Of a stretch of 64,000 nt of DNA, positions 9,715 through 46,140 are shown in pieces. The notes under the pieces are model-generated. The model did no database searches and had not been told where the DNA came from. It saw only the letters and a program-made list of their open reading frames with translations. A program made the position numbers and the translations under genes. Every line of letters begins with the position of its first letter. Position 1 is the stretch's first letter. The stretch spans positions 1 to 64,000 of the IMG/VR virus record IMGVR_UViG_3300028592_000004. One strand, 5' to 3'.

Positions 9715-10025
9715 AAGATGCCTTTCCGCGCTTTGAGCGCCTTGAGCTCATCCCAAATCAGACCGAGCCGGCCGCGGTACTGCGCTCCGTAGAACGTGAC
9801 CAGGGCATACCCGGGCATCGCTGTCGGCACGCCAAGGATGCCGGGCTCGGTCGTTTCGATGTTGAGGCCGGGCCAGGTCTGAACGACCTCCCGAAGATGA
9901 GGGATGTCCGCGATCTTGACGTTCTGATCGCACACCCACTGTGCGTTCCCGGTCCGCATCTTTGCTTCGTAGGCCAGAAACTTTTCATGCCAGTCATCGA
10001 AGCCCGGCACCTGCAGCTTGAGCAT
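9711..10025 (-). CDS. Hypothetical protein
   Basis: MLKLQVPGFDDW..., tight packing. Confidence 0.55.
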   Translation of the reverse strand: MLKLQVPGFDDWHEKFLAYEAKMRTGNAQWVCDQNVKIADIPHLREVVQTWPGLNIETTEPGILGVPTAMPGYALVTFYGAQYRGRLGLIWDELKALKARKGIL

Positions 10026-10026
10026 G

Positions 10027-10212
10027 TCAGATCCCCGTAATTTCGTCGTCGAACTCGTCAAACGCGTAGAGCAGCTTGATCGCCCAGTACATGGCAAGCA
10101 GCGTCAGTAGCACAACCTGCGAGAGCGGCTTCACGTGAAAGGCAGTCCACATCAGAGCCACGAAGGTGCCGCCCATCATGATGATGTGGACCCACAGCAG
10201 GAAGCGTTTCAT
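10027..10212 (-). CDS. Small two-helix membrane protein
   Basis: Two hydrophobic stretches. Confidence 0.6.
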   Translation of the reverse strand: MKRFLLWVHIIMMGGTFVALMWTAFHVKPLSQVVLLTLLAMYWAIKLLYAFDEFDDEITGI

Positions 10213-10400
10213 CGCAGCCCTTTCCAGCGGTCGCGAGATCGGAGCTTGCGTCGCTCCTTTCGCTGGGTTTTCTTCTTGGCCCTCAGCCTCTGCAGATCCT
10301 CGCCAGTCGGCTTGACGTGGTAGCCGTTGTGGTGGCTACCCCAGGCCGCAACGATCGCCTGCAGGGTGTCGTGAGGCTTAATCTTGATATCCCAGCTCAC
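10209..10400 (-). CDS. Small basic protein
   Basis: AAGGAGGAG before GTG; K/R-rich C-terminus. Confidence 0.5.
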   Translation of the reverse strand: MSWDIKIKPHDTLQAIVAAWGSHHNGYHVKPTGEDLQRLRAKKKTQRKERRKLRSRDRWKGLR

Positions 10401-10674
10401 GAAGCTCCTCCTTGGCCTGCTTGCCAACTCCGATACGGAGGTGGTGCATGAAGACCGGCTGGCCCGGTGCTTCCAGCGGCGAGCGCATCCATGCGCCAGG
10501 CAGAGCCATAGATTTCCCGATCGAGCGACCGATCCGAAGAACAATGGATCGTTCCTCGTAATACGCAGCCGGCAGGTCAGTGTAGGGCGGTGCTGTAAAG
10601 CGATGAGCCTCCAACAGCATATTCTCCAGCGTCGTGACGTGGTCAAACGACGCTGGATTGGTTGCAGGTCTCAA
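10378..10674 (-). CDS. Hypothetical protein
   Basis: AAGGA before TTG. Confidence 0.5.
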   Translation of the reverse strand: MRPATNPASFDHVTTLENMLLEAHRFTAPPYTDLPAAYYEERSIVLRIGRSIGKSMALPGAWMRSPLEAPGQPVFMHHLRIGVGKQAKEELRELGYQD

Positions 10675-10976
10675 GGCGTTCCTTTCTCTGGCTCTTCAAC
10701 CAGCGTCACTTCCCAGAAGTAGTAGAGCGCGTCAACCGCCTCACCATCCTTGCCGGCAGAGCGGACACGAACCATCTCCGGATAGACTTCACGCACATAG
10801 CCAGGCAAACCGGCCTTTGGCTGCACCCGCTTGCCCTTCCACTGGGTTTCGAGGTCCTGCATCCGGGCGTTGTAGGCTTCGTTGGCCTCCCGGGTCTGGA
10901 TCACAAGGTGAGCCAGCCCGTACAAAACGGCACCGCCGAAAACGGCGGTCAGGACGCCACTCCAGAACTTGTTCAT
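10671..10976 (-). CDS. Protein with N-terminal transmembrane helix
   Basis: MNKFWSGVLTAVFGGAVLYGLAHLVI; ATGA overlap. Confidence 0.6.
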   Translation of the reverse strand: MNKFWSGVLTAVFGGAVLYGLAHLVIQTREANEAYNARMQDLETQWKGKRVQPKAGLPGYVREVYPEMVRVRSAGKDGEAVDALYYFWEVTLVEEPEKGTP

Positions 10977-11629
10977 TCCCTTGCCTCTCCCGTGTAGGTC
11001 TTGCCACACGCCCGCGACCAGCCGTCCGGAATGTCCGGCTCAAAGACGGTGCCAAACTTAACCTTTCGGCAGCCACAAGCCCAGATCGTCCCCTTCGGAC
11101 TGATCAGCATGTCCTCGCAACAGCACCAGTCGTCGTTTGACTGGATGCCGTTCTTGAGAGCCGAGCCGTGAGGAGTGATGATCGTGTTCGACCGCACACC
11201 CTCGTGGTTCTTCCGGCGTTGCAGGTCGCGAAACGCGACAACGACAGCCTTGTCGATCGGGTCGTGCCACTCGTCTTGCGAGAGCACAGCCTCCAGCTTT
11301 CCTTCAGCGCACAGTCGAGCCAGCCGGAGAGCCGTCTTCGTCTGTGAGCCGTTGGTGATGATCAGCAGCGGGATACCGCTGTTGGAGAGCATCACTTCCT
11401 CACGGCGGTCCCACTCGTGGTACTCCAGCGCCCGCGTGACGAACGGCCAGAATTCCGGATGAAGCGTCGGTTCACCGCCACCGAGGCAGAAGTGATCACC
11501 GCGGTCGTGCGTGAGGCCCAGCGCCCGCAGAAAGACCTCACGTGACATGTCGACACCGATGCCCGGTCTGCAGCTGAAACAGCAGTGGGCACAGGCCATA
11601 TCGCAGCGTGTCGTGATCTGGATGTAGAT
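10973..11629 (-). CDS. Radical SAM protein, apparent ATC start
   Basis: IYIQITTRCDMACAHCC gives CxxxCxxC; GGEPTLHP; ITNG; C-terminal CCC...ACGC. Confidence 0.8.
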   Translation of the reverse strand: MYIQITTRCDMACAHCCFSCRPGIGVDMSREVFLRALGLTHDRGDHFCLGGGEPTLHPEFWPFVTRALEYHEWDRREEVMLSNSGIPLLIITNGSQTKTALRLARLCAEGKLEAVLSQDEWHDPIDKAVVVAFRDLQRRKNHEGVRSNTIITPHGSALKNGIQSNDDWCCCEDMLISPKGTIWACGCRKVKFGTVFEPDIPDGWSRACGKTYTGEARE

Positions 11630-11631
11630 GA

Positions 11632-11877
11632 CTACCCTCCGGCGTGAGCGAACTCAGGCGCGCTCTCGGCGAAGTCCTCCACAGTGCACAGCTCAACGAG
11701 CGACGTCGGGCTAACCGAGATCAGGTCGCCAGTCGGCGAAGCGCCGTAAACGAGCCGCGGGTTGAGCCCGTGATGCTGCACGGACTTTGCGCTCAGTCGG
11801 AGATGGACCTTGCCACCGCTCCGCTTCCGGAAGTACTGCCCTTCGGCAATGACCTCCGCGTCAACGATCAGTCTCAT
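11632..11877 (-). CDS. Hypothetical protein
   Basis: ATGA overlap. Confidence 0.55.
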   Translation of the reverse strand: MRLIVDAEVIAEGQYFRKRSGGKVHLRLSAKSVQHHGLNPRLVYGASPTGDLISVSPTSLVELCTVEDFAESAPEFAHAGG

Positions 11878-12107
11878 TTCGACTCCAGGATTTGAGGATC
11901 GAACGAGCTCATCTCCCAGTAGGCGAGAGGATCGAGATCGTCCCAGGCTTGATGTGGCAGATCGCTGAACTGAGGCGAGAATCTCGCTCGCCAGGACGCA
12001 GCAAATTGCCGGACATAGATACGTCTGACATTGACGACCCGGATCCGCGGCACAGGTTCGCTCGGATCCTTCCGACCGAGGCAGATGCAGTAATCGACCT
12101 CAGTCAT
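11874..12107 (-). CDS. Hypothetical protein
   Basis: MTEVDYCICL..., ATGACTGA overlap. Confidence 0.5.
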   Translation of the reverse strand: MTEVDYCICLGRKDPSEPVPRIRVVNVRRIYVRQFAASWRARFSPQFSDLPHQAWDDLDPLAYWEMSSFDPQILESK

Positions 12108-12405
12108 CCGCCGGCTCTCCCCCATCCGGATCCGGATTGGGCCTGTTGTGCCGGCTAGTCTGGTCGACCGTGAAGACTCCAGTCGCCGCGAGAACGCCCT
12201 GGATCCAACCCAGCCAACGGAAGGCTTTGTCGATCCGGTTGTCCCGCACAAACCCGATGATCCCGTCGCAGACGTAGATCAGGTGGTTGTGCTGCTGCTC
12301 GTCAGTCCACAGGCTCCAATCCAGTTCGACTGGACCGCGGACCGGCTCGCCCTTGAGCAGCTTTCGGTAGAGCTGCGCCACCTCAATGATCTTTTCGTTC
12401 GTCAC
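12100..12405 (-). CDS. Hypothetical phage protein (RWLGWIQG motif)
   Basis: HLIYVCDGI...KAFRWLGWIQGVL; paralog at 30783. Confidence 0.65.
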   Translation of the reverse strand: MTNEKIIEVAQLYRKLLKGEPVRGPVELDWSLWTDEQQHNHLIYVCDGIIGFVRDNRIDKAFRWLGWIQGVLAATGVFTVDQTSRHNRPNPDPDGGEPADD

Positions 12406-35861: not shown

Positions 35862-36110
35862 TCAGTCACCCAGTTTCTGCTGCCAATCGTCGTCAACGTC
35901 TGGCGGTTCGGCCTCTACATTTCGACGGGCCGCGTCAAGCATGTCGATAGCAACAGAGTCCGGTGCGTTCGTCGACAGATAGCTGAAGCCGGATTCCGTA
36001 TGCAGCACGATCGTCATCAACAGAACGCTCGGATGTTTTCGGGTAAGCGCGTCGGTCAGCTCACGCGCGACGTTCTGAAGTTCTTCCCTTATAGCCTCTT
36101 CGTCTGCCAT
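35862..36110 (-). CDS. Small hypothetical protein
   Basis: MADEEAIREEL... Confidence 0.55.
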   Translation of the reverse strand: MADEEAIREELQNVARELTDALTRKHPSVLLMTIVLHTESGFSYLSTNAPDSVAIDMLDAARRNVEAEPPDVDDDWQQKLGD

Positions 36111-36120
36111 GAGTTTCCCC

Positions 36121-36152
36121 AAAAGCACCGGCCCAGTTTCCCGGGCCGGTGC
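36121..36152 (-). terminator. Intrinsic terminator
   Basis: GCACCGGCCC / GGGCCGGTGC stem followed by TTTT on minus strand. Confidence 0.7.
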
Positions 36153-36189
36153 GAACTCATCTAGTTAAGGTCTTACGACCTACTCAGAA

Positions 36190-36378
36190 CTAACGGTCGC
36201 TGTCGGCATCGCCGGCCGCGGGCGGATCGGACTGCTCGGCGCCGGCCTCGGTGGGCTCGCCCGGCGTCGGTTCATCGGCGCTGGCCTCTTCAACGGGCAG
36301 TTTGCTCTCGTCAGCAACGGCCACGCCGCCCTCATCCCGACGACCCCGATACCCGTGACGCGGTTCATTTCCACACAT
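36190..36378 (-). CDS. 62-aa acidic, probably disordered peptide
   Basis: GAGGAG before ATG; E/D/P/A-rich tail. Confidence 0.5.
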   Translation of the reverse strand: MCGNEPRHGYRGRRDEGGVAVADESKLPVEEASADEPTPGEPTEAGAEQSDPPAAGDADSDR

Positions 36379-36433
36379 GGCGAACTCCTCAGAAACGTTT
36401 TGGCTCCTCTCGAAATGAGAGGTCGGCCCAGCA

Positions 36434-36456
36434 GAGCACCGGAACATCCGGTGCTC
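36434..36456. other. Perfect 10-bp hairpin
   Basis: GAGCACCGGA-ACA-TCCGGTGCTC, no U-tract. Confidence 0.6.
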
Positions 36457-36844
36457 ACTCGTCATTGAGACAGTGGCACATGCGTCCAGCAGGAGTTTCA
36501 TCTCCGCAATGAACGCAGAAGTCATGCCTGAGCTGTCCCATCACCTCTTCCCGCTGGAGAGCAGGGAGTGATCGCAAATGAGCGAAGAACTGCGCGGGGA
36601 CGCCCGCGGACAGCTCTTCAAAGGTCGGCATCTTCGGTCCAATGGCTGACGGGGCCATGTGGAAGAGCCATTTCTCGCCGGTCCAGAAATTGAAGAAGTC
36701 GACGGTGATCCAGGCCAGGTGGTCCTGCTGCCAGATCTTGCAGGTATACCACCCCGGTTCTGTTGGGTCCTGGATGTCACCGCTTCCAAGCTCCGGATCC
36801 TTAGTCGGAATCTTCGGGTCGCTCTGCGCTTTTGACCGCGGCAT
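36455..36844 (-). CDS. Hypothetical protein with C-terminal zinc ribbon
   Basis: FCVHCG...CHC. Confidence 0.55.
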   Translation of the reverse strand: MPRSKAQSDPKIPTKDPELGSGDIQDPTEPGWYTCKIWQQDHLAWITVDFFNFWTGEKWLFHMAPSAIGPKMPTFEELSAGVPAQFFAHLRSLPALQREEVMGQLRHDFCVHCGDETPAGRMCHCLNDE

Positions 36845-37001
36845 CAACTTCCTTCCTGGCCTGTTCGGCACGGTTGTAGGTGTTCGAGAGCTGCTTGACG
36901 CCTTCGGCGATGGCAGGATGGCCGAGCACACGCAGATTGGCCTCAACATCTGCGAAGCCCTCCACCGTCTCCGAGGCTGTTTGTTTACGCGGTTTGGTCA
37001 T
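36801..37001 (-). CDS. Small helical protein
   Basis: MTKPRKQTASE... Confidence 0.5.
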   Translation of the reverse strand: MTKPRKQTASETVEGFADVEANLRVLGHPAIAEGVKQLSNTYNRAEQARKEVDAAVKSAERPEDSD

Positions 37002-37140
37002 GGCTCTTTCGAGGCAAGAGAACGGAGGGCCTAGCGGCCAACTCACCACACGGCAGGTGACGCCTCTGGACGGCCAAGTGTGGGGTAGGGCTGGCCGCAC
37101 CGTCCCTGGATGGGGAATGTGCCGCGGTGCCCTGCTCGGC

Positions 37141-37365
37141 CTATACGGTGACCGGAACCGTTCGCGCGATCCTTCGACCCTCGCGATCGATCCGGTAGTT
37201 CTTGACATGGCAAGCCGCACAGAGGTGCAGCTTGGCCTTTCGATAAATGTCCCACTTCGAGCGCCTAGCCTCCTGTACAGCTGTACTGAAGTTGCGCGCT
37301 TCGAAGCTACGAACGGCTCCGCAAATGGTGCAGACGAGCTTCAAAACGGTCGTTTGGCGGTCCAA
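37141..37365 (-). CDS. Zinc-ribbon protein
   Basis: CTICG ... CAAC; AGGAGG before TTG. Confidence 0.6.
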   Translation of the reverse strand: MDRQTTVLKLVCTICGAVRSFEARNFSTAVQEARRSKWDIYRKAKLHLCAACHVKNYRIDREGRRIARTVPVTV

Positions 37366-37482
37366 AGTGGCCTCCTAGGGCGTTGAGAAAGTTGCCCACG
37401 TGGTCTCCAAAATCCGGTTTCATTTGTCAACAAGACCGGTTTTGGGCGATTTTCCTGGAACTATTTCGATTTTCTGTCCGAG

Positions 37483-38301
37483 TTACGGTCGACTGAGACG
37501 CGCAATCACAGGCACCTTCCAGAGCCACGGAGAGGGATGCTGGAAGGTGTCGGTCGTCGCGACCGTGTCGTACATACTCAGCGCGTCGAGGCCTTTGGAG
37601 AAGATTCCGTGGGCCACAAACAGGGCTGTTGATCTGGCGCCGGCGAGCCGCGGATGAAGCATCTTGAAGGTTGCTCCACCATCGCAGATGTCGTCCACAA
37701 CGAGGACGTGCAGACCAGTGGCATCAACAGGCTTGTCGTCAACGCCGCGGATCTCCTTGTAGACGAGAGATCCGGTCGACGGATCTCGCGACTTCTCGCC
37801 GTACCAGACGTGAAAAGAGGGAACACGAACCGCCGCTTCCTGCTGACTGCGAAGGAAGGCTCCCTTATCCGGCAACAGGATGACCGTATCTTCGCTTGGC
37901 CAGCCCAGGCGCTGCAGGAGAGTGTCGACCTCGGGCCACATCGAAACGTTCTCAAGATTGTCGATCTCAGCGAACGCTGCCGCACTGTGGGCCTCGTAGG
38001 TACGCACGCGGGAGTAACCGAGCTCGTTGATCAGCCGGCCGAACACGCGTAGCGAGAACGGCGACAGCTTCTCAGGGTCAGTCACACGATCCTGCCGGCC
38101 GTACGGTAGATAAGGGAGAACGAGAGTCCTCGGCTGCATACCGTTCCGCTTGAGGACGTCTGTCGCAAGGAGCAGATTCATCAGCGCGGAACTGGATCGA
38201 ATGTCGGCCAGGAGAAACCCGTCGTTCTCCATGCCGGCTTGCAGCACAACATGCTGCTCCCCGGCGGAGAAGGTCAGCGTCTTAAAACTGGACAGAAGCA
38301 T
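37483..38301 (-). CDS. prs: PRPP synthetase-like protein (possible Adps of NARP1)
   Basis: FSAGEQHV, LPYLPYGRQDR, EAHS, LPDKGA, VVDDICDGGATF, AHGIFSKG. Confidence 0.85.
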   Translation of the reverse strand: MLLSSFKTLTFSAGEQHVVLQAGMENDGFLLADIRSSSALMNLLLATDVLKRNGMQPRTLVLPYLPYGRQDRVTDPEKLSPFSLRVFGRLINELGYSRVRTYEAHSAAAFAEIDNLENVSMWPEVDTLLQRLGWPSEDTVILLPDKGAFLRSQQEAAVRVPSFHVWYGEKSRDPSTGSLVYKEIRGVDDKPVDATGLHVLVVDDICDGGATFKMLHPRLAGARSTALFVAHGIFSKGLDALSMYDTVATTDTFQHPSPWLWKVPVIARLSRP

Positions 38302-39685
38302 GGAAGTTCCTTCGCACTTCGTCGAACGTGTAGCGCCGCAGGATCTGCCCGTTTCGGAAAACAGGCATGAGTTCGCTGGGCGCGTCGGGCGGTGCCGAGT
38401 CGTAGGTGACCCCGGCGCGGAGAGCGACCCGGCCAACATGGCTCTTCTTGCCAGAGTCGGTGATCGGGTCCTTGAAGATGTTGACGTTGCGACCGTTCCG
38501 CGTGATCTGCGTGGCCTTGATCGCCATCCCCAGAGTGTCCCGCGTGCCGGCCCGGAGCAGACCACCAGCTCCGATGACGATATTCGATCCGTCGTACCCA
38601 GAGCCGACAGAGCGAATCAGCGTCTCCTCGTACCGCTGATGGTACATCCCGTCCCCGTAGATCAGCCCGATCTTCGGATTCAAGATACGGTACGGACTGT
38701 CGGCCAGCCGCTCGCTGCCGAACAACTCGTCCAACAGGACCAGCACACCCTTGGCCTCCGGCGTACCTGGCTCAGCCTTGGCATCACCGCAGATGATGTC
38801 CGGCGGGTAACCGCTATCGGGACGGATGATGACCCGACCGTTACGGGCAAGGATCTTGTCCTTCAGCCGCGGCAGAATGTTCGTACAGACGTGCCAGATC
38901 GAGTAGGTGTCCGAGACGATGGAAACGTAGCCGTCCGGATACAACTCCAGCATCCGCTCGAACGCCTCGAACTCGAACTCGCGACCGTAGGAGCACATGA
39001 CAGAGTGCTCGGAGGCGGGCACAGACATCATGCACGGCGATTCCGTTGGGAGGCTGTAGTACTCCTCAATGAACGGCTCGGCCACGATCGTGTCGCTGCC
39101 GCGGAACACGATGAGATGCGCTGCGCCGGAGATTGCCGCTGACTCCTCAGACGTGTCGCTCCGGTAGCCGAAGTCGTGCACGTTGAATTCCAGAGGCTGT
39201 CGCGAGTAGCGACGAGCGATTCGGTAATACTCCAGACTGTTTGTCGCGACGGTGCAGGGATACCACACCTTCAGCAGCAACGATTCCAGAAAGCCCGGCG
39301 CCCACGGGAAGTCGTCGTGCGTCGACTCCAGCGTGAGCAGGGCATTCTTCACCGGCAGGACGGTGCCCTCAGGCACGGCGCTGATCTCGACAGGCCACTG
39401 ACCGAGGTCAGCGATGCCGTGGAGCTTCTCCTTGATGTCGTCGCTCGGCTCGGACCCGAGGATCCGCCGACGCCGCTTGAGGAAGTCCTCGACGTTGGCC
39501 GTCGTGATGGGCTGAGTCAAGTACTCCATCAGGTAGTACTGCAAGCCGAAGAACAGGAGCTCCTCGAAGTACTTGTCGCTTCGGGCGTTCAGATACGAAA
39601 TCACCCGGGTGGTCCCGGGTGCGTACTGTTCCATGTGGCCCATCTTGTAGACGTCAGTCCGCAGAAGCGGGTGAACTAGCTTCAT
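38282..39685 (-). CDS. nadV: Nicotinamide phosphoribosyltransferase-like protein (possible Namat of NARP1)
   Basis: TDVYKMGH-x-x-QY, HDFGYR, ASEHSVM, SIVSDTY, IIRPDSG, IYGDG, KDPITD-x-GK-x-S. Confidence 0.92.
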   Translation of the reverse strand: MKLVHPLLRTDVYKMGHMEQYAPGTTRVISYLNARSDKYFEELLFFGLQYYLMEYLTQPITTANVEDFLKRRRRILGSEPSDDIKEKLHGIADLGQWPVEISAVPEGTVLPVKNALLTLESTHDDFPWAPGFLESLLLKVWYPCTVATNSLEYYRIARRYSRQPLEFNVHDFGYRSDTSEESAAISGAAHLIVFRGSDTIVAEPFIEEYYSLPTESPCMMSVPASEHSVMCSYGREFEFEAFERMLELYPDGYVSIVSDTYSIWHVCTNILPRLKDKILARNGRVIIRPDSGYPPDIICGDAKAEPGTPEAKGVLVLLDELFGSERLADSPYRILNPKIGLIYGDGMYHQRYEETLIRSVGSGYDGSNIVIGAGGLLRAGTRDTLGMAIKATQITRNGRNVNIFKDPITDSGKKSHVGRVALRAGVTYDSAPPDAPSELMPVFRNGQILRRYTFDEVRRNFHASVQF

Positions 39686-39694
39686 GACTCGCTT

Positions 39695-40087
39695 TCATTC
39701 GATGTCGATGCCTCGCACGTTTGTTGGCGAGGCTGGTGGAGGAGGTGATTCAGGCGACAACATAGCCTGACGCTGCAGAAAGTCGAGCAAGGCGACAGCC
39801 TGAGAACGTGTCACAGGTTTCATCGCCGTCAGCTGCTCAGTGCCGCGAACCCAGACCTCGAACTTCACGGGGTCTGTTTCGATGATGAGGTTGAGTCGGC
39901 CGAAGCGGAGTGAAAAGCCAGAAGCCGACTGCGAATGCTTCGGTCCTGGATCCTGGTCAGCGAAGACAGCCAACGCATTCGCCTGCGGACCAGTCATCAG
40001 CAGAACAAGATCGACATCGGAGTTGGGCTTTGGCGATCCGTAGACGCGACTCCCTGTCAGGATAGCGTTCGGCCGCAGGTCAGGCAC
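39695..40087 (-). CDS. Minimal nucleotidyltransferase (MNT)-like protein
   Basis: ILTGSRVYG...SDVDLVLL. Confidence 0.7.
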   Translation of the reverse strand: MPDLRPNAILTGSRVYGSPKPNSDVDLVLLMTGPQANALAVFADQDPGPKHSQSASGFSLRFGRLNLIIETDPVKFEVWVRGTEQLTAMKPVTRSQAVALLDFLQRQAMLSPESPPPPASPTNVRGIDIE

Positions 40088-40496
40088 CGGTCTTGAACCG
40101 CCCCGGCCAGAAGATCTCAAGCTCGCGAGCCGCCGCTTCGGGGCTATCGCTCGTGTGGGACACCGAGAACGGCAACCTCCGCATGAAGTCCCCGCGGATG
40201 GTGCCCGGCTCCGGGTCCACAGTAGAACCCTGCATTGCTCGGGCTTTCTCGATCGCGTTCTCTCCGGAGATGACCACTGCGATCATCTCCAAGTCCGCGG
40301 TGACGTCGATCAACCGCTCGAAGAAGTCCTTTGACTTATGCTCTTCGTACAGCTTCTCGATCTTGCCGTAGTTCGGCGTAATCATCTCCACATGGAGAAT
40401 ATCGAACCGACGCTCAAGCCGGGCCAAGATCGTCCCTGCCAGCTCTCGCTTCAGGGCGTGGTTCTTGATGAGAAAGAGGGTGACTTGCTGCGACAT
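40080..40496 (-). CDS. ndk: Nucleoside diphosphate kinase (divergent)
   Basis: TLFLIK, HKSKDFF, PGTIRGDF, HTSDSPEAAAREL. Confidence 0.85.
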   Translation of the reverse strand: MSQQVTLFLIKNHALKRELAGTILARLERRFDILHVEMITPNYGKIEKLYEEHKSKDFFERLIDVTADLEMIAVVISGENAIEKARAMQGSTVDPEPGTIRGDFMRRLPFSVSHTSDSPEAAARELEIFWPGRFKTGA

Positions 40497-40771
40497 TTGG
40501 AAACCGTGCTCCTCGGTGAGAGGTCTGCGGACAGACCCAGGGCGGAAAGAACGACGCCAAGAAGTCGACGCTGAGCCAGGCGTCGATATCGACCGTAAAT
40601 CGCAACCCAGTTGATAGGCCCGTGGGTGCGGCCGGCGGCGTCTGACAGAAACGACGGAAGATCACGCCAGGTGACTGGCATGGTGACGTAGTAGTGGAGA
40701 GCGAGGGCCACGCACTTCGAGCTCACGACGGGCTTGCGCCCGCAAGTGATCTCGCCTTTCGCCTCAGCCAA
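40451..40771 (-). CDS. Hypothetical basic protein
   Basis: TTG start overlapping upstream stop; uncertain. Confidence 0.4.
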   Translation of the reverse strand: MAEAKGEITCGRKPVVSSKCVALALHYYVTMPVTWRDLPSFLSDAAGRTHGPINWVAIYGRYRRLAQRRLLGVVLSALGLSADLSPRSTVSKCRSKSPSFSSRTTP

Positions 40772-41108
40772 AGCAGTCGCCGCGAGGGCGAGCTGCCTTC
40801 GGTTCGGCGGGACCCATGCTGAGGAATTGCTCGAACCAGTGCCAGCACGACAGATCAATTTCCGACTTGTGCTGCTCGATCGACCTGCGGACATACTGGA
40901 AGTTCCCGACGTACTTTTGGTGGCCAATGCCGAACCCGTACACGCCGAGATTGAGCGATTGTGAGCCCAGGTCGTCGTCCGTCAGGCGAAGCACAGCCTG
41001 CGTGAGAACGACCTGGCGACCGTCCGACATCGTGCGGACGAAAGAAGGCTCCTCGAACATGTCGACGATTTCGACCTGTCGGGGAGGATCGTAAAGATTC
41101 AGCATCAA
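40764..41108 (-). CDS. Hypothetical protein
   Basis: Overlap with upstream stop. Confidence 0.55.
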   Translation of the reverse strand: MMLNLYDPPRQVEIVDMFEEPSFVRTMSDGRQVVLTQAVLRLTDDDLGSQSLNLGVYGFGIGHQKYVGNFQYVRRSIEQHKSEIDLSCWHWFEQFLSMGPAEPKAARPRGDCFG

Positions 41109-41332
41109 CGCATCCAGTGGGACTTGGTCATATCCCAGCCCCCTGTCGGCACCGGTGCGATCGTCGCCTGAGGCGCCTGTGCGTTGACCCCGGGAGGAGC
41201 CATCGGCGACATCGGCTTCTGCGGCATGGCAAGGGGCTTGGGCAGAGCGCTGGGTGGCTGCGGAAGCGGAGGCTTGCCGAGACCCATGCCCATCTTCTCC
41301 AGTGCCTTCATGGCAATTTTGACGCGGTCCAT
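41105..41332 (-). CDS. Small Pro-rich protein
   Basis: KPPLPQPPSALPKPLAMPQKPMSPMAPP. Confidence 0.45.
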   Translation of the reverse strand: MDRVKIAMKALEKMGMGLGKPPLPQPPSALPKPLAMPQKPMSPMAPPGVNAQAPQATIAPVPTGGWDMTKSHWMR

Positions 41333-41362
41333 CGCTTAGGTCTCAATCGAGGTCAAGGTGCC

Positions 41363-41686
41363 TCAGTGTGTGATCTGGATCGCCCGGAAGTCCGCGCTGG
41401 TTGAGCGTGCGGGCGGGTTCCCCGCCAGTTCGCCCGTCACCGGAATCACGTCGCGATCCTGCATCTGCAGCTCTTCCTCCGGCTTCTGGATCAGGACCTG
41501 ACGGCCGTCCTGGAGCAGGAGGGAGTTGTACCCCGCATGATACCCGTTCCCGGTCACGGGATTTCGCGCGAGCCGCTCGTTCGAGAAGTTCACGAACTCT
41601 CGCAGCGCGGAGGAGACCGCTTCGGGTAGTGATCGGCCGGCCGAAAACTCGTCCAGCGCATGCTCGTAGATCGTCTTCACATCCAT
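41363..41686 (-). CDS. Hypothetical protein
   Basis: MDVKTIYEHALDEF... Confidence 0.55.
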   Translation of the reverse strand: MDVKTIYEHALDEFSAGRSLPEAVSSALREFVNFSNERLARNPVTGNGYHAGYNSLLLQDGRQVLIQKPEEELQMQDRDVIPVTGELAGNPPARSTSADFRAIQITH

Positions 41687-43116: not shown

Positions 43117-45333
43117 TTACGAGTTAAGTCCGTAGTGCCAGCGGATTTCTTTCTGCCAATCTGAGCCGTACTTCGCACGGAAGACGTCTCTGGCAGCCGC
43201 GGCATCACAAATCTGGTGATGAGCGATCTGGTCGCCCCTTTGACCGTCCAAGTATACCCGACGCGAGCGATAATGGAACACGAAGCACCGGTCTGTCAAT
43301 AGAACCCGGAATCCGTCATCCCGAGCCCGCTTCTGAAGTTCGTGGCCTGCGCCAAATCCACTCAGTGGAAAGTCCTCGTCCAGGAGGCCCACGCGATCAA
43401 ACACAGACCGGGAAACCATCATGGCCTCAGTCGAAACGACGGGGCATTCTTCAGTCGTCACGCCAGCTTCGTAGTGGTGGATATCACCGAAATGTCCACG
43501 GTTCTGCAACTCCTGAGCGTTCGACACAGCGGCGATGATTCCATCCGCAGGCTGCGGGTGGTCATGAGCGACGACAGCCATCTCGTGAAAGAAGCCTGCG
43601 CTCAGAGCCACGTCATTGTGCAGCAGCAGAAAACGGTCGTATGCCGGATTCGGCATAACCGATTCCAGAGCCATGTTGACTGCCTTCGACCAGCCGATGT
43701 TCTTGCCCGGCACCAGTACAGTCTCGTCAGCAACAGCGTGGTAGTCCCCACTGTTGTCGACCACCACGACCGGTAACCCGGCGTCCCGCGCCTTATGCAC
43801 GAGCCCGGTCGTCATGTCGTGATACTTGAAGGTGACGATGATCACGACAATTCGGCCTGCTGTCTTCTCCGCTGGGTCGAGCCACTGGTCGTCCAGCCGT
43901 TTGAGCATTCGCCTCAGCGACTGACGACGGACATTGAGGCGGTGCCCCATGTCCCGCTCAACCTGATGATTGTCGAGAGCGACGTGGTTGCAGTGGCCGA
44001 CCACAACCGTCTTTGCATGCTTGGAGAGTACGCGAAGCTCGCGGCCCCGGACGTGCCCCAGCCGGTACATGAGCTCGTACTTGTCGTTGTTGCCAAAGCT
44101 GATGTCCTCCCGGAATTGCTCCTTCGTCAACCCGCGGAAAGCAAGCATGCACTCCGTGGCCGGCGACAGCACGTGACCTGACTGCGATGTGCGCTGACAA
44201 GGGATCGAGTAGTAGCGGCGGCTCTGATGCTGCTCACAACCCTGCCGGAACGCCTCCCACTGCCGATCGGTGAAGAACGTGTCACCATCGAAGACGACTG
44301 TCACCTGAGCCACGAGCGAGCCGTACCAGATCCCGAGGTTGCGAGCCCGGTTGATCTGGATGGCCCGCACGACCTTCTGTGCGGTCGACTTGGCCTTGCG
44401 GTAGGCGTGAGGAGAGAACGGCAGTTCCATCCAATGCCGCTGGTACTTCTCCAGCAGCTCGATGTACTTTGCGCGAAGCTCCTCGTTGTGGAGCGAGTTC
44501 ACGATGTAGATCTCGTGACAGTCCTCTTGAGCCGGCATCTGGAGAATGTGCTCCAGCGTGGCTAGCCGTGAGCCCGCGTTGTCCCGCGGCGGCAGCTCGT
44601 TGCCGACGATCCGCACGACGCAGAACGAGAACTTACGGAGCACCTCTTTGCCAGGCAGCTCCACCTTGTGATTTCGGGATCCACGGCGCCGAATCGTGAC
44701 GAACTGATTCGGCGGTCCGTGGTGGATGAACCCGGGTCCCAGAACGTGGCCCTTCACCTTGTGCTTCCACAAGACATAGGGCAGGCTGATCTGGTCCCGG
44801 TAGGAACCACGGGCGATCTCTTTCCACCAGGAGGCCAAGATCGGAGCCGCGGCGCGATCGGCGATCAGAACGCCTGTCTCGAAGTGGTCTCCCTTGTCAG
44901 GGAACCCTTCCTTGCGATACCGGCGGAGTTGGCGGTTCTGAATACCGCTCTTGTCCCACCCGTCACGGTTGATGCAGTCGACCTCCTGGGCCACAGAGTG
45001 AACCAGGGGCCGGCGGAAGGCCGCAATCGGCCCGTGGAGCTTCATGTCCCGAAAGACCGCCAGATCCATCTTGGCGATCAGGTTCGAGTCCATCCAGACG
45101 ACGCGTTTCGCCCTCGGGAAGAGCCTCAGGATGTGGGTCTTGTGCCACCGGGCGGTCCGGCGGGACGGCAGCGCCACGTCGATCGTAGGGACCGCAATCC
45201 AGCCTTTCCGTCCCATTCGCTCACGAACCGTAGGATCGGAGCAGAAAGCAATGCACGGGTATTGAACAGACGGCACCCGTGGAATGACATCGGTCGCCCC
45301 GATCATCGCCGTGACAAAGACCAAGTCGTCCAT
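43117..45333 (-). CDS. Three-domain glycosyltransferase (DUF616/TOD1-MUCI70-like, GT-A-like, GT2-like)
   Basis: RWHK...VVWMDSN...RDQISLPYVLW; VVFDGD; VVVVDNSG...NIGWSKAVN...LLLHND...FDRVGLLDEDF. Confidence 0.75.
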   Translation of the reverse strand: MDDLVFVTAMIGATDVIPRVPSVQYPCIAFCSDPTVRERMGRKGWIAVPTIDVALPSRRTARWHKTHILRLFPRAKRVVWMDSNLIAKMDLAVFRDMKLHGPIAAFRRPLVHSVAQEVDCINRDGWDKSGIQNRQLRRYRKEGFPDKGDHFETGVLIADRAAAPILASWWKEIARGSYRDQISLPYVLWKHKVKGHVLGPGFIHHGPPNQFVTIRRRGSRNHKVELPGKEVLRKFSFCVVRIVGNELPPRDNAGSRLATLEHILQMPAQEDCHEIYIVNSLHNEELRAKYIELLEKYQRHWMELPFSPHAYRKAKSTAQKVVRAIQINRARNLGIWYGSLVAQVTVVFDGDTFFTDRQWEAFRQGCEQHQSRRYYSIPCQRTSQSGHVLSPATECMLAFRGLTKEQFREDISFGNNDKYELMYRLGHVRGRELRVLSKHAKTVVVGHCNHVALDNHQVERDMGHRLNVRRQSLRRMLKRLDDQWLDPAEKTAGRIVVIIVTFKYHDMTTGLVHKARDAGLPVVVVDNSGDYHAVADETVLVPGKNIGWSKAVNMALESVMPNPAYDRFLLLHNDVALSAGFFHEMAVVAHDHPQPADGIIAAVSNAQELQNRGHFGDIHHYEAGVTTEECPVVSTEAMMVSRSVFDRVGLLDEDFPLSGFGAGHELQKRARDDGFRVLLTDRCFVFHYRSRRVYLDGQRGDQIAHHQICDAAAARDVFRAKYGSDWQKEIRWHYGLNS
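45247..45266. promoter_or_regulatory. Variant of 20-bp site inside 5' end of GT gene
   Basis: AGCAATGCACGGGTATTGAA. Confidence 0.4.
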
Positions 45334-45336
45334 GAC

Positions 45337-46140
45337 TTACCAAGTTGTACGCGTCCTGGGAACGTTGCCACCGATCGCGGTCGGGGTCTCCGTGAACTCC
45401 GCAACATACGCTGGCCGGAGCAGGGATTCCAGACCGAGAAGAATCGCAGCCTGGATGATGTTGGGTGCCCAGGTCGCTCTACGCCAGGAAACATGCCCAG
45501 GCGTGAACATGTAGTAGAGGGTGGCACGCTGCTGCGTCGTCTTCAGCGGCCTGGCGCCGTGAATCATCGTCTCAGTGAAAGCGATGATGTCGCCCTGTTC
45601 CAGCCGCGGAGCAACGAGAGCACCGTCAGCCACGGGATAGCCATCCTCAAAGACATGCTTTCGGACAGCACCACCCTGCATAGCGAAGGCACTCTTGTGA
45701 GAGCCCGGAAGGAGCACCAGGCCACCCTCGTCACCACCTTGTGCGTGAAGTGGGATCCCGACAGAGACCTGCGTACAGAAGGGCGATCCGTTCTGGTTGA
45801 AGAACAGATGGGTTCCTTGGGCGGCGCCTGGACCGCCATGAAGATTGCTGACTTCGACCCCGTTGCTGTCTGGCTGCAGTCGAATGAAAGCGTGGTCCAA
45901 GCGAAATCCGCTGCCCAGGACCTTTTCAAGCAACTTCATCAAGTTGATGCTCTTCAGCAAGCGAAGCCCGCCGTACGGAGTGACGTCAAGGAAGGGCACC
46001 TTGACCGACTTGGCTTCCTTGATTCGGGCCTCAAGACCCACCCGAACCTCCTCAACCCAGTCCGCCGGCAGCAACTTGCTAAAGTGGACAAAGCCGAGGG
46101 AGTCGAACAGATACTCTTCACGACTCGGAACATAGCTCAT
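45337..46140 (-). CDS. PhyH-like 2OG-Fe(II) oxygenase, copy 1
   Basis: RLDH, LHGG, GGLVLLPGSHKS, GDIIAFTETMIHG. Confidence 0.8.
   Translation of the reverse strand: MSYVPSREEYLFDSLGFVHFSKLLPADWVEEVRVGLEARIKEAKSVKVPFLDVTPYGGLRLLKSINLMKLLEKVLGSGFRLDHAFIRLQPDSNGVEVSNLHGGPGAAQGTHLFFNQNGSPFCTQVSVGIPLHAQGGDEGGLVLLPGSHKSAFAMQGGAVRKHVFEDGYPVADGALVAPRLEQGDIIAFTETMIHGARPLKTTQQRATLYYMFTPGHVSWRRATWAPNIIQAAILLGLESLLRPAYVAEFTETPTAIGGNVPRTRTTW

What the first reader, a model, noticed from the sequence alone, without database searches (positions are those of the whole stretch)
37483..39685. Adjacent NAMPT-like and PRPS-like genes: likely NARP1-type NAD+ reconstitution pathway
Seen: a complete NAMPT-fold gene overlapping a PRPS-fold gene. 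Known: phage NARP1 uses a PRPS homologue (Adps; ADP-ribose to ADPR-PP) and a NAMPT homologue (Namat) to rebuild NAD+ after cleavage by Thoeris/SIR2-type defences. Inference: this pair is NARP1-like rather than classical salvage, since no NadR/NadM/NadD adenylyltransferase was recognised in the window.
Basis: partly seen in the sequence, partly recalled or inferred. Interest (0 to 1): 0.6.

Follow-up and report, generated by a model that had tools for sequence, protein, structure and literature searches.

The report
Clamp-less NARP1-like NAD+ rebuilding gene pair
A 229-kb soil phage carries two overlapping genes that most likely rebuild NAD+ from ADP-ribose and nicotinamide after host defences destroy it, but the second enzyme belongs to a separate branch that lacks the adenine clamp said to define the known phage enzyme.

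Summary
A 467-aa NAMPT-family gene (38282-39685, minus) overlaps by 20 bases a 272-aa PRPS-family gene (37483-38301, minus; the 360-aa ORF is over-extended).

- The PRPS-like protein groups with proven Adps enzymes (ICP1, FADO, a Bas63 relative) against cellular Prs, with SH-aLRT 100.
- It carries the Adps-type loop DDICDGGxTF, not the canonical DDMIDTGGT.
- The complete 229-kb genome has no NMN adenylyltransferase. Its only nucleotidyltransferase hit is HldE-like.

The NAMPT partner is not a canonical Namat.
- It lacks both aromatic clamp residues (GAGGLLRAGTRD, against GSFTYQYNTRD in Namat) and has the short Nampt-type loop.
- It falls in a third clade, "type C", separate from Namat (A) and from NARP2-type Nampt (B).
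- All 13 distinct type-C viral loci have an Adps-like neighbour. None of four near-complete type-C genomes has an NMNAT.
- Type C shares a 13-residue loop and the YGD motif with Namat.
- In soil Bacteroidota the same pair sits between the regulator NrtR and NADAR or ADP-ribosylglycohydrolase genes.

Best reading: a NARP1-like ADPR-to-NAD+ module with a clamp-less transferase. This is a new variant of a known kind. Substrate preference is untested.

The parts
38282..39685 (-). NAMPT-family gene, 467 aa, of the 'type C' clade. The catalytic core is intact but the Namat aromatic clamp is absent.
   Evidence: Core residues map to SPbetaL1 Namat through the PDB alignment: D11, Y13, F172, R175, D198, A224, H227 (catalytic His), R288, D290, G344, D345, R382.
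37483..38301 (-). Adps-like PRPS-family gene, 272 aa.
   Evidence: It groups with ICP1, FADO and FelixO1 Adps and apart from 7 canonical-type Prs (6 cellular plus the one in viral locus L052), with SH-aLRT 100. TIGR01251 scores it below the cut-off. The identical 272-aa protein is on record.
38282..38311 (-). Gene junction. It holds the AGGA ribosome-binding site (38311-38308), the Adps-like start ATG (38301-38299) and the NAMPT stop TAA (38284-38282). The two genes overlap by 20 bases.
   Evidence: Read directly from the sequence.
38537..38575 (-). SCH-equivalent helix of the NAMPT homologue, residues 371-383 (IGAGGLLRAGTRD). There is no aromatic residue at clamp positions 3 and 7. R378 is conserved and specific to type C.
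   Evidence: R378 is conserved in 93% of 137 type-C sequences, against 1% of type A and 0% of type B.
39545..39583 (-). SCL-equivalent loop, residues 35-47 (RSDKYFEELLFFG). It is 15 residues by the ruler, as in Nampt. Namat loops measure 17-23.
   Evidence: K38-Y39 resembles the K-W of the Bas63-like (FelixO1) loop.
37666..37695 (-). Adps-type PP loop, residues 203-212 (DDICDGGATF).
   Evidence: Alignment A1 and the table of 59 sequences. All A-linked and C-linked proteins have DD[IL]C.GG.TF-like loops. E. coli Prs has DDMIDTGGTL, and the Prs beside a type-B Nampt (L052) has DDMIDTGATI.
37792..37794 (-). K170, the equivalent of the catalytic Lys185 of ICP1 Adps.
   Evidence: It is invariant in alignment A1. 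Its role in ICP1 Adps is described in PMC13586617.
38753..38791 (-). Residues 299-311 (CGDAKAEPGTPEA). This loop is shared by type A and type C and is absent from type B and from cellular Nampt.
   Evidence: Gaps opposite this loop appear in the alignments to Xanthomonas and mammalian Nampt.

Best explanation
The two overlapping genes form a self-contained NAD+ reconstitution module of the NARP1 kind.

Proposed mechanism:
- Step 1 (inferred from family membership): the Adps-like enzyme uses ATP to pyrophosphorylate ADP-ribose, the product of host NADase defences, giving ADPR-PP.
- Step 2 (inferred, less certain): the NAMPT-family enzyme joins nicotinamide to ADPR-PP and gives NAD+ directly. 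No NMN adenylyltransferase is then needed.

The transferase belongs to a distinct 'type C' lineage.
- It is a sister lineage to Namat, but it keeps a Nampt-like pocket entrance with no aromatic adenine clamp.
- It probably discriminates less against PRPP, or it holds the AMP moiety with other residues. Candidates are the type-C-specific R378, Y348 and Y352, and K38/Y39.

The likely benefit to the phage is escape from NAD+-depleting defences such as Thoeris, DSR, SIR2-HerA and similar systems.
For: Adps side:
- In two trees the protein falls with ICP1 Adps (biochemically and structurally characterised), FADO Adps (deletion-tested) and a Bas63 relative. This clade is separated from 7 canonical Prs by a branch with SH-aLRT 100.
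- It has the conserved donor-site loop DDICDGGxTF, which PMC13586617 proposes as the annotation rule.
- Catalytic K170 is present and the C-terminus is short.
- SPbetaL1 Adps gave no product in the Prs-type assay.
- As a contrast, the one PRPS gene found beside a type-B Nampt (L052) has the canonical loop and groups with cellular Prs.

Pathway logic:
- 13 of 13 distinct type-C viral loci have an Adps-like neighbour. Only 1 of 24 type-B loci has a PRPS neighbour, and that one is canonical.
- No NMNAT was found in four type-C genomes at least 90% complete. The only hits were HldE-like or CoaD-like.
- All 3 type-B genomes at least 90% complete have an NMNAT-like ORF within 1-3 kb of the Nampt gene, though one of the three hits is below the family cut-off.
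- No third conserved gene was found across type-C loci.

NAMPT side:
- The catalytic core is intact.
- Type C shares 25 diagnostic positions with type A that type B lacks. These include YGD (QGD in Nampt) and a 13-residue loop missing from type B and from cellular Nampt.
- The C-terminal half scores 181-185 bits against Namat-type structures and 120-124 bits against cellular Nampt.
- Type-C-specific conserved residues cluster beside the AMP-contact positions (347/348/352 and 371-378).
- Even the clamp-less KVP40 Nampt makes NAD+ from ADPR-PP in vitro.

Bacterial context:
- The closest relatives (Pedobacter, Mucilaginibacter, Ilyomonas; 490-520 bits) sit in loci of the form nrtR, adps-like, nampt, then NADAR or ADP-ribosylglycohydrolase.
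- ADP-ribose is the NrtR effector (PMC2330246).
Against: - The transferase fails the published Namat signature at every AMP-side position that separates Namat from Nampt. Window residues G173, G346, G375, L376 and A379 stand where SPbetaL1 has S190, A362, S391, F392 and Y396.
- Clamp double mutants of SPbetaL1 Namat lost anti-defence activity in vivo yet kept PRPP-dependent NMN synthesis.
- The window belongs to a sub-group (R-x-G-TRD) that also lacks the His or aromatic residue most type-C members have after the conserved Arg.
- No type-C enzyme and no C-linked Adps has been assayed.
- The absence of a phage NMNAT does not exclude use of a host NMNAT.
- C-linked and A-linked Adps are interspersed and poorly resolved in the tree, so nothing shows that the pairs co-evolved.
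Confidence: 0.6

Rival explanations
1. A PRPP-based salvage pair. The PRPS-like enzyme makes PRPP from ribose-5-phosphate. The Nampt-like enzyme makes NMN from PRPP and nicotinamide. A host NMN adenylyltransferase (NadR or NadM), or the NMN deamidase route, completes NAD+.
For: - The transferase's pocket entrance is Nampt-like at all five positions that separate Namat from Nampt, and its SCL loop has Nampt length.
- Namat clamp mutants keep the PRPP-to-NMN activity.
- prs-nadV operons under NrtR were originally read this way (PMC2330246).
- A real Prs plus Nampt pair does exist in a viral contig (L052).
Against: - The PRPS-like protein is in the Adps clade, not the Prs clade (support 100).
- It lacks the canonical D-T-G-G-T loop that L052 and all cellular Prs keep.
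- The one Adps assayed that way showed no Prs activity.
- Type-B Nampts, the true PRPP users, come with an NMNAT next door. Type C never does in the genomes examined.
- Type C shares derived characters with Namat rather than with Nampt.
Confidence: 0.2
2. A dual-substrate or differently specialised module. The clamp-less transferase accepts both PRPP and ADPR-PP. Alternatively the pair acts on a different ADP-ribose derivative or a different base than nicotinamide. The product mix would then depend on what the host defence leaves behind.
For: - The open Nampt-like entrance lies beside type-C-specific conserved residues at the AMP site (R378, Y348, Y352).
- Both KVP40 Nampt and SPbetaL1 Namat use both donors in vitro, with opposite preferences.
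- Defences that produce modified ADPR products exist (abstract of 10.64898/2026.01.28.702374).
Against: - Nothing in the sequence points to another base. The nicotinamide-binding residues F172, D198, R288 and Y13 are all conserved.
- No accessory phosphatase, Macro, NADAR or ARH gene is present in this genome.
Confidence: 0.15
3. A bacterial housekeeping NAD+/ADPR recycling cassette picked up by the phage. It would serve as a general metabolic booster, with no role in counter-defence.
For: - The closest relatives are chromosomal genes of soil Bacteroidota, Planctomycetes and others.
- The Adps-type loop occurs in more than 585 bacterial contigs.
- The neighbouring gene upstream but one is a nucleoside diphosphate kinase.
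Against: - This concerns origin and selective benefit, not mechanism, so it is compatible with the best explanation.
- Type-C pairs recur in many large viral contigs.
- NARP1 in phages has a demonstrated anti-defence role.
Confidence: 0.05

Closest known systems
NARP1 (Adps + Namat) of phages Bas63, SPbetaL1, FADO and ICP1
   Same: - A two-gene module of one PRPS-family and one NAMPT-family gene on the same strand, with no NMNAT in the genome.
- The PRPS homologue is in the Adps clade, with the Adps PP loop, the catalytic Lys and a short C-terminus.
- The NAMPT homologue shares the catalytic core, the YGD motif and a 13-residue loop with Namat.
   Different: - The transferase lacks the SCH motif GS-x-x-x-x-x-x-TRD with aromatics at positions 3 and 7. 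It has a helix one residue shorter, GGLLR-x-G-TRD.
- Its SCL loop is short.
- Gly replaces SPbetaL1 S190, A362 and S391.
- It forms a separate clade at about 40% identity.
- Gene order is namat-like first, then adps-like. That order was seen in 3 of 13 distinct type-C loci and in 1 pair of near-identical type-A loci.
NARP2 (Nampt + bifunctional Nmnat) of Vibrio phage KVP40
   Same: The pocket entrance is Nampt-like (GG-LL helix, HDFG-R, GDG) and the loop has similar length.
   Different: - There is no Nmnat anywhere in the genome, and an Adps-like gene sits next door.
- The enzyme lies outside clade B (support 100).
- It has YGD rather than QGD, and it has the 13-residue loop that clade B and cellular Nampts lack.
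Bacterial nrtR-prs-nadV operons (Rodionov et al. 2008, PMC2330246) and bacterial NARP1 (Paenibacillus foliorum, PMC12774641)
   Same: - The same gene pair.
- The closest relatives of the window's NAMPT are type-C genes of Pedobacter, Mucilaginibacter and Ilyomonas. They lie downstream of an NrtR regulator that responds to ADP-ribose.
   Different: - The window has no NrtR, NADAR or ARH gene.
- The biochemically tested bacterial pair (P. foliorum, 72% identical to SPbetaL1 Namat) should be type A, not type C.
Canonical ribose-phosphate pyrophosphokinase (Prs)
   Same: The fold is shared, as are the RQDR and DD motifs and the catalytic Lys.
   Different: - It scores below the TIGR01251 cut-off.
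- It lies outside the Prs clade.
- It has DGGAT-F where Prs has DTGGT-L.
- About 25 N-terminal and 25 C-terminal residues of the Prs model are missing.

Membership tests
Adps (NARP1 ADPR-PP synthetase) | Falls in the Adps clade, separate from cellular Prs (Osterman et al. criterion). | tested here: met
   The clade of 40-56 A-linked and C-linked proteins includes ICP1, FADO and FelixO1. It is separated from E. coli Prs, five other bacterial Prs and L052 with SH-aLRT 100.
Adps (NARP1 ADPR-PP synthetase) | Remodelled PP loop (ICP1 C215-S220 plus F221), conserved across Adps homologues. | tested here: met
   The window has DDICDGGATF, ICP1 has DDICDGAASF and FelixO1 has DDICDGGRTF. Canonical Prs has DDMIDTGGTL.
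Adps (NARP1 ADPR-PP synthetase) | Catalytic Lys on the beta-hairpin (ICP1 K185). | tested here: met
   K170 is invariant in alignment A1. It is also conserved in Prs, so this feature does not discriminate.
Adps (NARP1 ADPR-PP synthetase) | Loss of the C-terminal alpha11-alpha12 regulatory module. | tested here: met
   36 residues follow the HGIFSKG motif, against 59 in E. coli Prs. The TIGR01251 match ends at model position 282 of 309. This is sequence-level evidence only.
Adps (NARP1 ADPR-PP synthetase) | A NAMPT-family gene in the immediate vicinity (97% of the clade). | tested here: met
   The two genes overlap by 20 bases.
Adps (NARP1 ADPR-PP synthetase) | Converts ADPR and ATP to ADPR-PP, and does not convert R5P to PRPP. 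| not testable with these tools
   This needs an enzyme assay.
Namat (NARP1 nicotinamide ADPR-transferase) | Nampt-like catalytic core with the catalytic His. | tested here: met
   F172, R175, D198, A224, H227, R288, D290, G344, D345, D11, Y13 and R382 map to the SPbetaL1 contact residues.
Namat (NARP1 nicotinamide ADPR-transferase) | [quoted passage not shown] | tested here: not met
   The window has G-G-L-L-(gap)-R-A-G-T-R-D, so L376 and A379 stand at the two clamp positions. All 119 closest database relatives also lack the motif.
Namat (NARP1 nicotinamide ADPR-transferase) | Extended SCL loop that provides a stacking residue (R40, or K/Y followed by the next residue). | tested here: inconclusive
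   The loop is 15 residues, as in Nampt (14-15), against 17-23 in type A. It does begin R-S-D-K-Y-F, like the FelixO1/Bas63-type R-S-D-K-W-F. Type B often has K plus an aromatic there too.
Namat (NARP1 nicotinamide ADPR-transferase) | Falls in the Adps-associated Namat clade. | tested here: not met
   Clade A (48 sequences including ICP1, FADO and FelixO1) has support 100 and excludes the window. The window lies in clade C (13 sequences, support 91). Shared derived characters place C on the Namat side of the family.
Namat (NARP1 nicotinamide ADPR-transferase) | Prefers ADPR-PP over PRPP and forms NAD+ directly. | not testable with these tools
   This needs an enzyme assay.
NARP2 (Nampt + Nmnat) | Nampt of the Adps-free clade, together with an Nmnat encoded in the same phage. 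| tested here: not met
   The window is not in clade B. The whole genome has one CTP_transf_like hit, which is HldE-like (324.7 bits to NF008454, against 35 bits to the generic cytidylyltransferase domain). The stand-alone 158-aa Nudix protein has no adenylyltransferase domain.
NARP3 (PnuC + NadR) | A NadR-like bifunctional enzyme with an NMNAT domain. | tested here: not met
   No NadR-type CTP_transf_like hit was found in the genome. PnuC itself was not searched.
Canonical Prs (TIGR01251 ribP_PPkin) | Scores above the curated cut-off and groups with cellular Prs. | tested here: not met
   It scores 98.7 bits against a cut-off of 113 and lies outside the Prs clade.

The most novel reading that the evidence does not exclude
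Type C would be a previously undescribed third lineage of the Nampt/Namat family. It would be obligately paired with Adps and widespread in soil phages and bacteria. It would make NAD+ from ADPR-PP without the aromatic selectivity clamp. Recognition would rest on a different set of residues (conserved R378 in a shortened helix, Y348 and Y352 after the GDG motif). Alternatively type C would be the evolutionary intermediate between Nampt and Namat. Either way the clamp would not be the universal determinant of ADPR-PP use, and the shared A+C features (the YGD motif and the 13-residue loop) would be candidates for the 'additional determinants' that clamp transplantation into human Nampt failed to supply.
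Probability: 0.45. Interest if true: 0.7.

Novelty: new variant of a known kind. Interest (0 to 1): 0.6.

Why it matters
NARP1 is a major phage answer to NAD+-depleting immunity. Its transferase was recently defined structurally by an adenine 'selectivity clamp' said to be as important as the catalytic centre.

This window shows an abundant lineage in which a bona fide Adps-clade enzyme is always paired with a transferase that lacks that clamp. More than 119 sequence clusters at 48-64% identity belong to it, from both phages and bacteria.

If the pair works as NARP1, two things follow. The motif-based rule for calling Namat misses a whole branch. And the question of what really determines ADPR-PP use becomes directly testable with natural proteins.

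If it does not work as NARP1, then Adps-clade enzymes are not all ADPR-specific, and genomic counts of NARP1 based on Adps adjacency are inflated.

The link to NrtR, NADAR and ARH in soil Bacteroidota also bears on the old puzzle of why bacteria keep a second 'prs' beside nadV.

Tried and rejected
- Near-identity DNA search of the phage collection found no match. The best protein matches there are at most 41.5% identical. The two I inspected (Gordonia OneUp, Pseudomonas JG004) are type A. I did not show that type C is absent from cultured phages.
- PDB sequence search for an Adps structure found only canonical PRPS chains, the best being Sulfolobus at 51.8 bits. The ICP1 Adps entries seem not to be in the copy, so no structure-based comparison was possible.
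- Accession guesses for Bas63 and SPbetaL1 were wrong (MZ501111 is Bas51; OM236515 is SPR, which has no NAMPT homologue). FelixO1 (same genus as Bas63) and FADO were used instead. SPbetaL1 Namat was compared only through the printed PDB alignment.
- A single-protein scan of bacterial genomes with the PRPS-like protein found nothing. The alignment-based scan succeeded.
- I asked whether Chitinophaga pinensis Nampt, a well-used PRPP-dependent enzyme, is type C. Genomes in that family carry all three types, and the large genomes carry type B, so this gives no evidence on type C.
- I looked for a third conserved gene in type-C viral loci and found none.
- Macro, NADAR and ADP-ribosylglycohydrolase genes were sought in the phage genome and not found.
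- No sigma-70-like promoter lies in 36000-41500, and terminator-like hits do not exceed chance.
- Read laying gave only short contig fragments. No RNA run holds the region, so expression is unknown.
- Not run, because they could not decide the donor substrate: structure prediction, complex prediction and the large representative-protein search.
- Only genetic code 11 was used.
Full report
SETTING. The window is the first 64 kb of a single 229,210-base virus record. CheckV rates it 100% complete, and it has about 60% G+C. The same DNA, or close strains of it, occurs only in soil metagenomes (8 runs). Genes near the finding are small, tightly packed and mostly on the minus strand.

OBSERVATION. 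ORF 38282-39685 (minus, 467 aa) is a full-length NAMPT-family protein. It matches Pfam NAMPT_N plus NAPRTase, phrog_448 at 444.8 bits, and NF006629 at 439.7 bits, above its cut-off of 405.

The ORF 37483-38565 is mechanically 360 aa, but its first 88 residues are read in an alternative frame of the NAMPT gene's 3' end. The homologous part starts at ATG 38301, six bases after an AGGA. A 272-aa protein with that exact start is on record from independent gene calls. This protein is a PRPS homologue: Pribosyltran_N, phrog_619 at 185.7 bits, and TIGR01251 at 98.7 bits, below its cut-off of 113.

The genes therefore overlap by 20 bases. Variant contigs in other soil samples differ at 28 positions in the two genes, 25 of them synonymous. 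Both frames are real and under purifying selection.

IS THE PRPS HOMOLOGUE AN ADPS? I fetched three reference loci:
- ICP1, whose Adps has solved structures and assays (PMC13586617).
- FADO, whose NARP1 was deletion-tested.
- FelixO1, in the same genus as Bas63.

I also fetched E. coli prs, five canonical Prs genes from bacteria that also carry an Adps-like paralogue, and about 90 IMG/VR loci.

In two maximum-likelihood trees, all PRPS-like proteins that sit beside a NAMPT homologue of type A or C form one side of a branch with SH-aLRT 100. The seven canonical Prs form the other side. The window's protein lies inside the Adps side.

The loop that binds the ATP donor in ICP1 Adps (C215-S220, F221) reads as follows:
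- DDICDGAASF in ICP1.
- DDICDGGRTF in FelixO1.
- DDICDGGATF in the window.
- DDMIDTGGTL in E. coli Prs.

One viral contig, L052, has a PRPS gene beside a type-B Nampt. That PRPS has the canonical loop (DDMIDTGATI), is 309 aa long and groups with cellular Prs. This shows what a true Prs plus Nampt pair looks like, and the window is not like it. SPbetaL1 Adps gave no product in the Prs-type assay. By every sequence-level criterion the window's protein is an Adps-family member.

IS THE NAMPT HOMOLOGUE A NAMAT? PMC12774641 defines Namat by a 'selectivity clamp'. [quoted passage not shown] The other is an extended SCL loop that gives a third stacking residue (R40).

The PDB search aligns the window to SPbetaL1 Namat itself (9w5x, 293.7 bits). 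From that alignment:
- The NMN-side contacts are all conserved: D11, Y13, F172, R175, D198, A224, H227, R288, D290, G344, D345 and R382.
- The AMP-side contacts are not. S190 becomes G173, A362 becomes G346, S391 becomes G375, F392 becomes L376 and Y396 becomes A379. R40 becomes K38, followed by Y39.
- The helix is one residue shorter.

Alignments with ICP1, FelixO1, FADO and KVP40 give the same picture. The three NARP1 references have G-[IV]-G-S-[FY]-T-Y-Q-Y-x-T-R-D. KVP40 NadV has GMGGGLLQQLDRD and the window has GAGGLLRAGTRD.

THREE TYPES. Across 90 viral loci plus the references, the family splits cleanly:
- Type A (Namat; 50 loci). It has the aromatic SCH, an SCL of 17-23 residues, HDFS-x-R and YGD[SA]. 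An Adps-like gene was found in 46 of 50 loci; the four without one are contig ends or fragments.
- Type B (Nampt, NARP2-like, including KVP40; 24 loci). It has GG[GA]LLQ, an SCL of 14-15 residues, HDFG-x-R and QGDG. No PRPS neighbour occurs except the canonical one in L052.
- Type C (the window plus 16 loci, 13 of them distinct). It has GG[IL]L(L)[RQ], an SCL of 15 residues, HDFGYR and YGDG. An Adps-like neighbour is present in every locus.

In the tree each type is one side of a branch, with support 100 for A, 100 for B and 91 for C. The Namat membership test by motif and by clade is therefore not met. Membership of the NARP2 Nampt clade is not met either.

WHICH SIDE OF THE FAMILY IS TYPE C ON? 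A site-by-site comparison used 137 type-C, 100 type-A and 22 type-B sequences.
- 25 positions are shared by C and A but not B. They include Y343 (YGD against QGD), R351, G340, G386, T392 and residues 299-313.
- 15 positions are shared by C and B but not A. These are concentrated at the AMP site: G173, G346, G375 and L377.
- 18 positions are specific to C. They include R378 (93%), M347, Y348 and Y352, which flank the AMP-contact residues.

The 13-residue loop 299-311 is present in the Namat-type PDB chains and absent from Xanthomonas and mammalian Nampt. The C-terminal half of the window's protein scores 181-185 bits against Namat-type chains and 120-124 bits against cellular Nampts.

Type C is thus most simply a sister lineage of Namat that never acquired the aromatic clamp, or lost it. 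[quoted passage not shown] The characters shared by A and C are candidates for those determinants.

PATHWAY LOGIC.
- The whole genome has one CTP_transf_like hit. It is a 478-aa PfkB-plus-cytidylyltransferase protein that matches HldE (324.7 bits) and sits among glycosyltransferase-like genes.
- It also has one stand-alone 158-aa Nudix protein.
- Three further type-C genomes at least 90% complete also have no NMNAT. One has a CoaD-like protein (100.9 bits to CoaD, 29 bits to NMNAT), one has an HldE-like protein, and one has nothing.
- As a positive control, all three type-B genomes at least 90% complete have an NMNAT-like ORF of 346-407 aa within 1-3 kb of the Nampt gene. One of these hits is weak.
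- No third gene is conserved across type-C viral loci.

Type C therefore behaves genomically like NARP1 (two genes suffice), not like NARP2.

BACTERIAL RELATIVES. Among the 80 fetched, most have type-A partners. Eight have type-C partners, from Pedobacter, Mucilaginibacter, Ilyomonas and an unnamed Bacteroidota genome. These eight are the closest known relatives of the window's NAMPT, at 486-522 bits.

In those eight loci the pair follows an NrtR regulator (Nudix plus NrtR winged helix). In some it is followed by a NADAR protein or an ADP-ribosylglycohydrolase. NrtR is released from DNA by ADP-ribose, and nrtR-prs-nadV operons with an unexplained second prs were noted in 2008 (PMC2330246). This context fits an ADPR-consuming function, though it does not prove one.

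The word search shows that type C is large. 119 clusters at 48-64% identity were listed, and none of them carries the Namat SCH motif. They come from contigs of both phage size and bacterial size. Within one bacterial family (Chitinophagaceae) all three types occur.

MECHANISM AND CONFIDENCE.
- Shown: gene structure; family and clade membership of both proteins; presence or absence of the signatures; absence of NMNAT; strict linkage of type C to Adps-like genes.
- Inferred: Adps activity on ADPR, from clade and loop.
- Inferred with less certainty: direct NAD+ formation by the transferase from ADPR-PP.

KVP40 Nampt, which has no clamp, still forms NAD+ from ADPR-PP in vitro. A clamp-less enzyme fed by a dedicated Adps is therefore plausible. 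On the other side, clamp mutants of SPbetaL1 Namat failed in vivo, and the window's sub-group (R-x-G-TRD) lacks even the His or aromatic residue that most type-C members have.

I put 0.6 on a NARP1-like ADPR-to-NAD+ module, 0.2 on a PRPP/NMN route finished by the host, and 0.15 on a dual or differently specialised substrate range. The remainder goes to a purely metabolic role.

NOVELTY. The kind of system (NARP1) is known, and the Adps half is an ordinary member. The transferase half is a distinct lineage that fails the published defining motif. I found no description of it in the papers held, but the literature search was not exhaustive. I rate it a new variant of a known kind, with interest 0.6.

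LIMITS.
- The trees used the quick search with SH-aLRT support only.
- The NAMPT tree is unrooted, and the A+C grouping rests on the midpoint root plus the shared indel and sites.
- Relationships among Adps proteins are unresolved.
- Sample sizes for complete genomes are small (4 type C, 3 type B).
- SPbetaL1 and Bas63 sequences themselves were not available as references.
- No expression data exist.

Noticed in passing
window 40080-40496 (-): A nucleoside diphosphate kinase gene (PF00334, 104.8 bits) lies two genes upstream of the NAMPT-like gene. It is on the same strand, with overlapping or 9-base gene junctions. It may be in the same transcription unit. It is not conserved in other type-C loci.
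   Followed up: partly
window 43117-46140 (-); G000:C1:86702-89968 (L001): There is a 738-aa glycosyltransferase-like ORF and a PhyH-like dioxygenase in the window. About 88 kb into the genome lies an HldE-like heptose-7-phosphate kinase/adenylyltransferase with glycosyltransferase-like neighbours. The phage seems to encode a sugar (heptose) modification pathway. A related type-C phage (L103) has the same HldE-like gene.
   Followed up: partly
L072 (IMGVR_UViG_3300049929_000026), NAMPT ORF of 773 aa: A type-A NAMPT homologue carries an insertion of about 290 aa exactly inside the SCH clamp motif (between GVGSF and TYQHVTRD). It looks like an intein.
   Followed up: no
L052 (IMGVR_UViG_3300025161_000004) 10001-12400: A type-B Nampt is followed 54 bases later by a 309-aa PRPS. 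That PRPS has the canonical DDMIDTGATI loop and groups with cellular Prs. This is a genuine viral Prs plus Nampt pair, distinct from NARP1.
   Followed up: partly
L116, L123, L127, L131, L134, L139, L150, L160 (Bacteroidota genomes): Type-C pairs in Pedobacter, Mucilaginibacter and Ilyomonas lie in loci of the form nrtR, adps-like, nampt. In some a NADAR or an ADP-ribosylglycohydrolase gene follows, and in L139/L116 a further three-gene block whose last member is adenylosuccinate-synthetase-like.
   Followed up: partly
PDB 9ke8 / 9keo: This solved NAMPT-family chain of 495 aa has SCH GVGAQTYQRNTRD, IYGDG and the A/C-type loop. That is another clamp variant, with only one aromatic residue. No paper naming these entries was found.
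   Followed up: partly
L022 (Salmonella phage FelixO1) 1468-3249: The FelixO1 NAMPT homologue (593 aa) has an insertion of about 100 residues just after the RPDSGDP motif, relative to all other sequences.
   Followed up: no
G000:C1:200152-203499 (L002): A stand-alone 158-aa Nudix hydrolase lies between an epimerase-like ORF (297 aa) and a 456-aa ORF of unknown role. It has only weak family matches (YtkD-like, 27.7 bits). I did not test whether it acts on ADP-ribose or NAD+.
   Followed up: partly
window 37546-38218: In one soil run (X3) two contig variants coexist over the Adps-like gene. One is identical to the window and the other about 5-7% divergent, almost entirely at third codon positions. 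This indicates co-occurring strains.
   Followed up: yes
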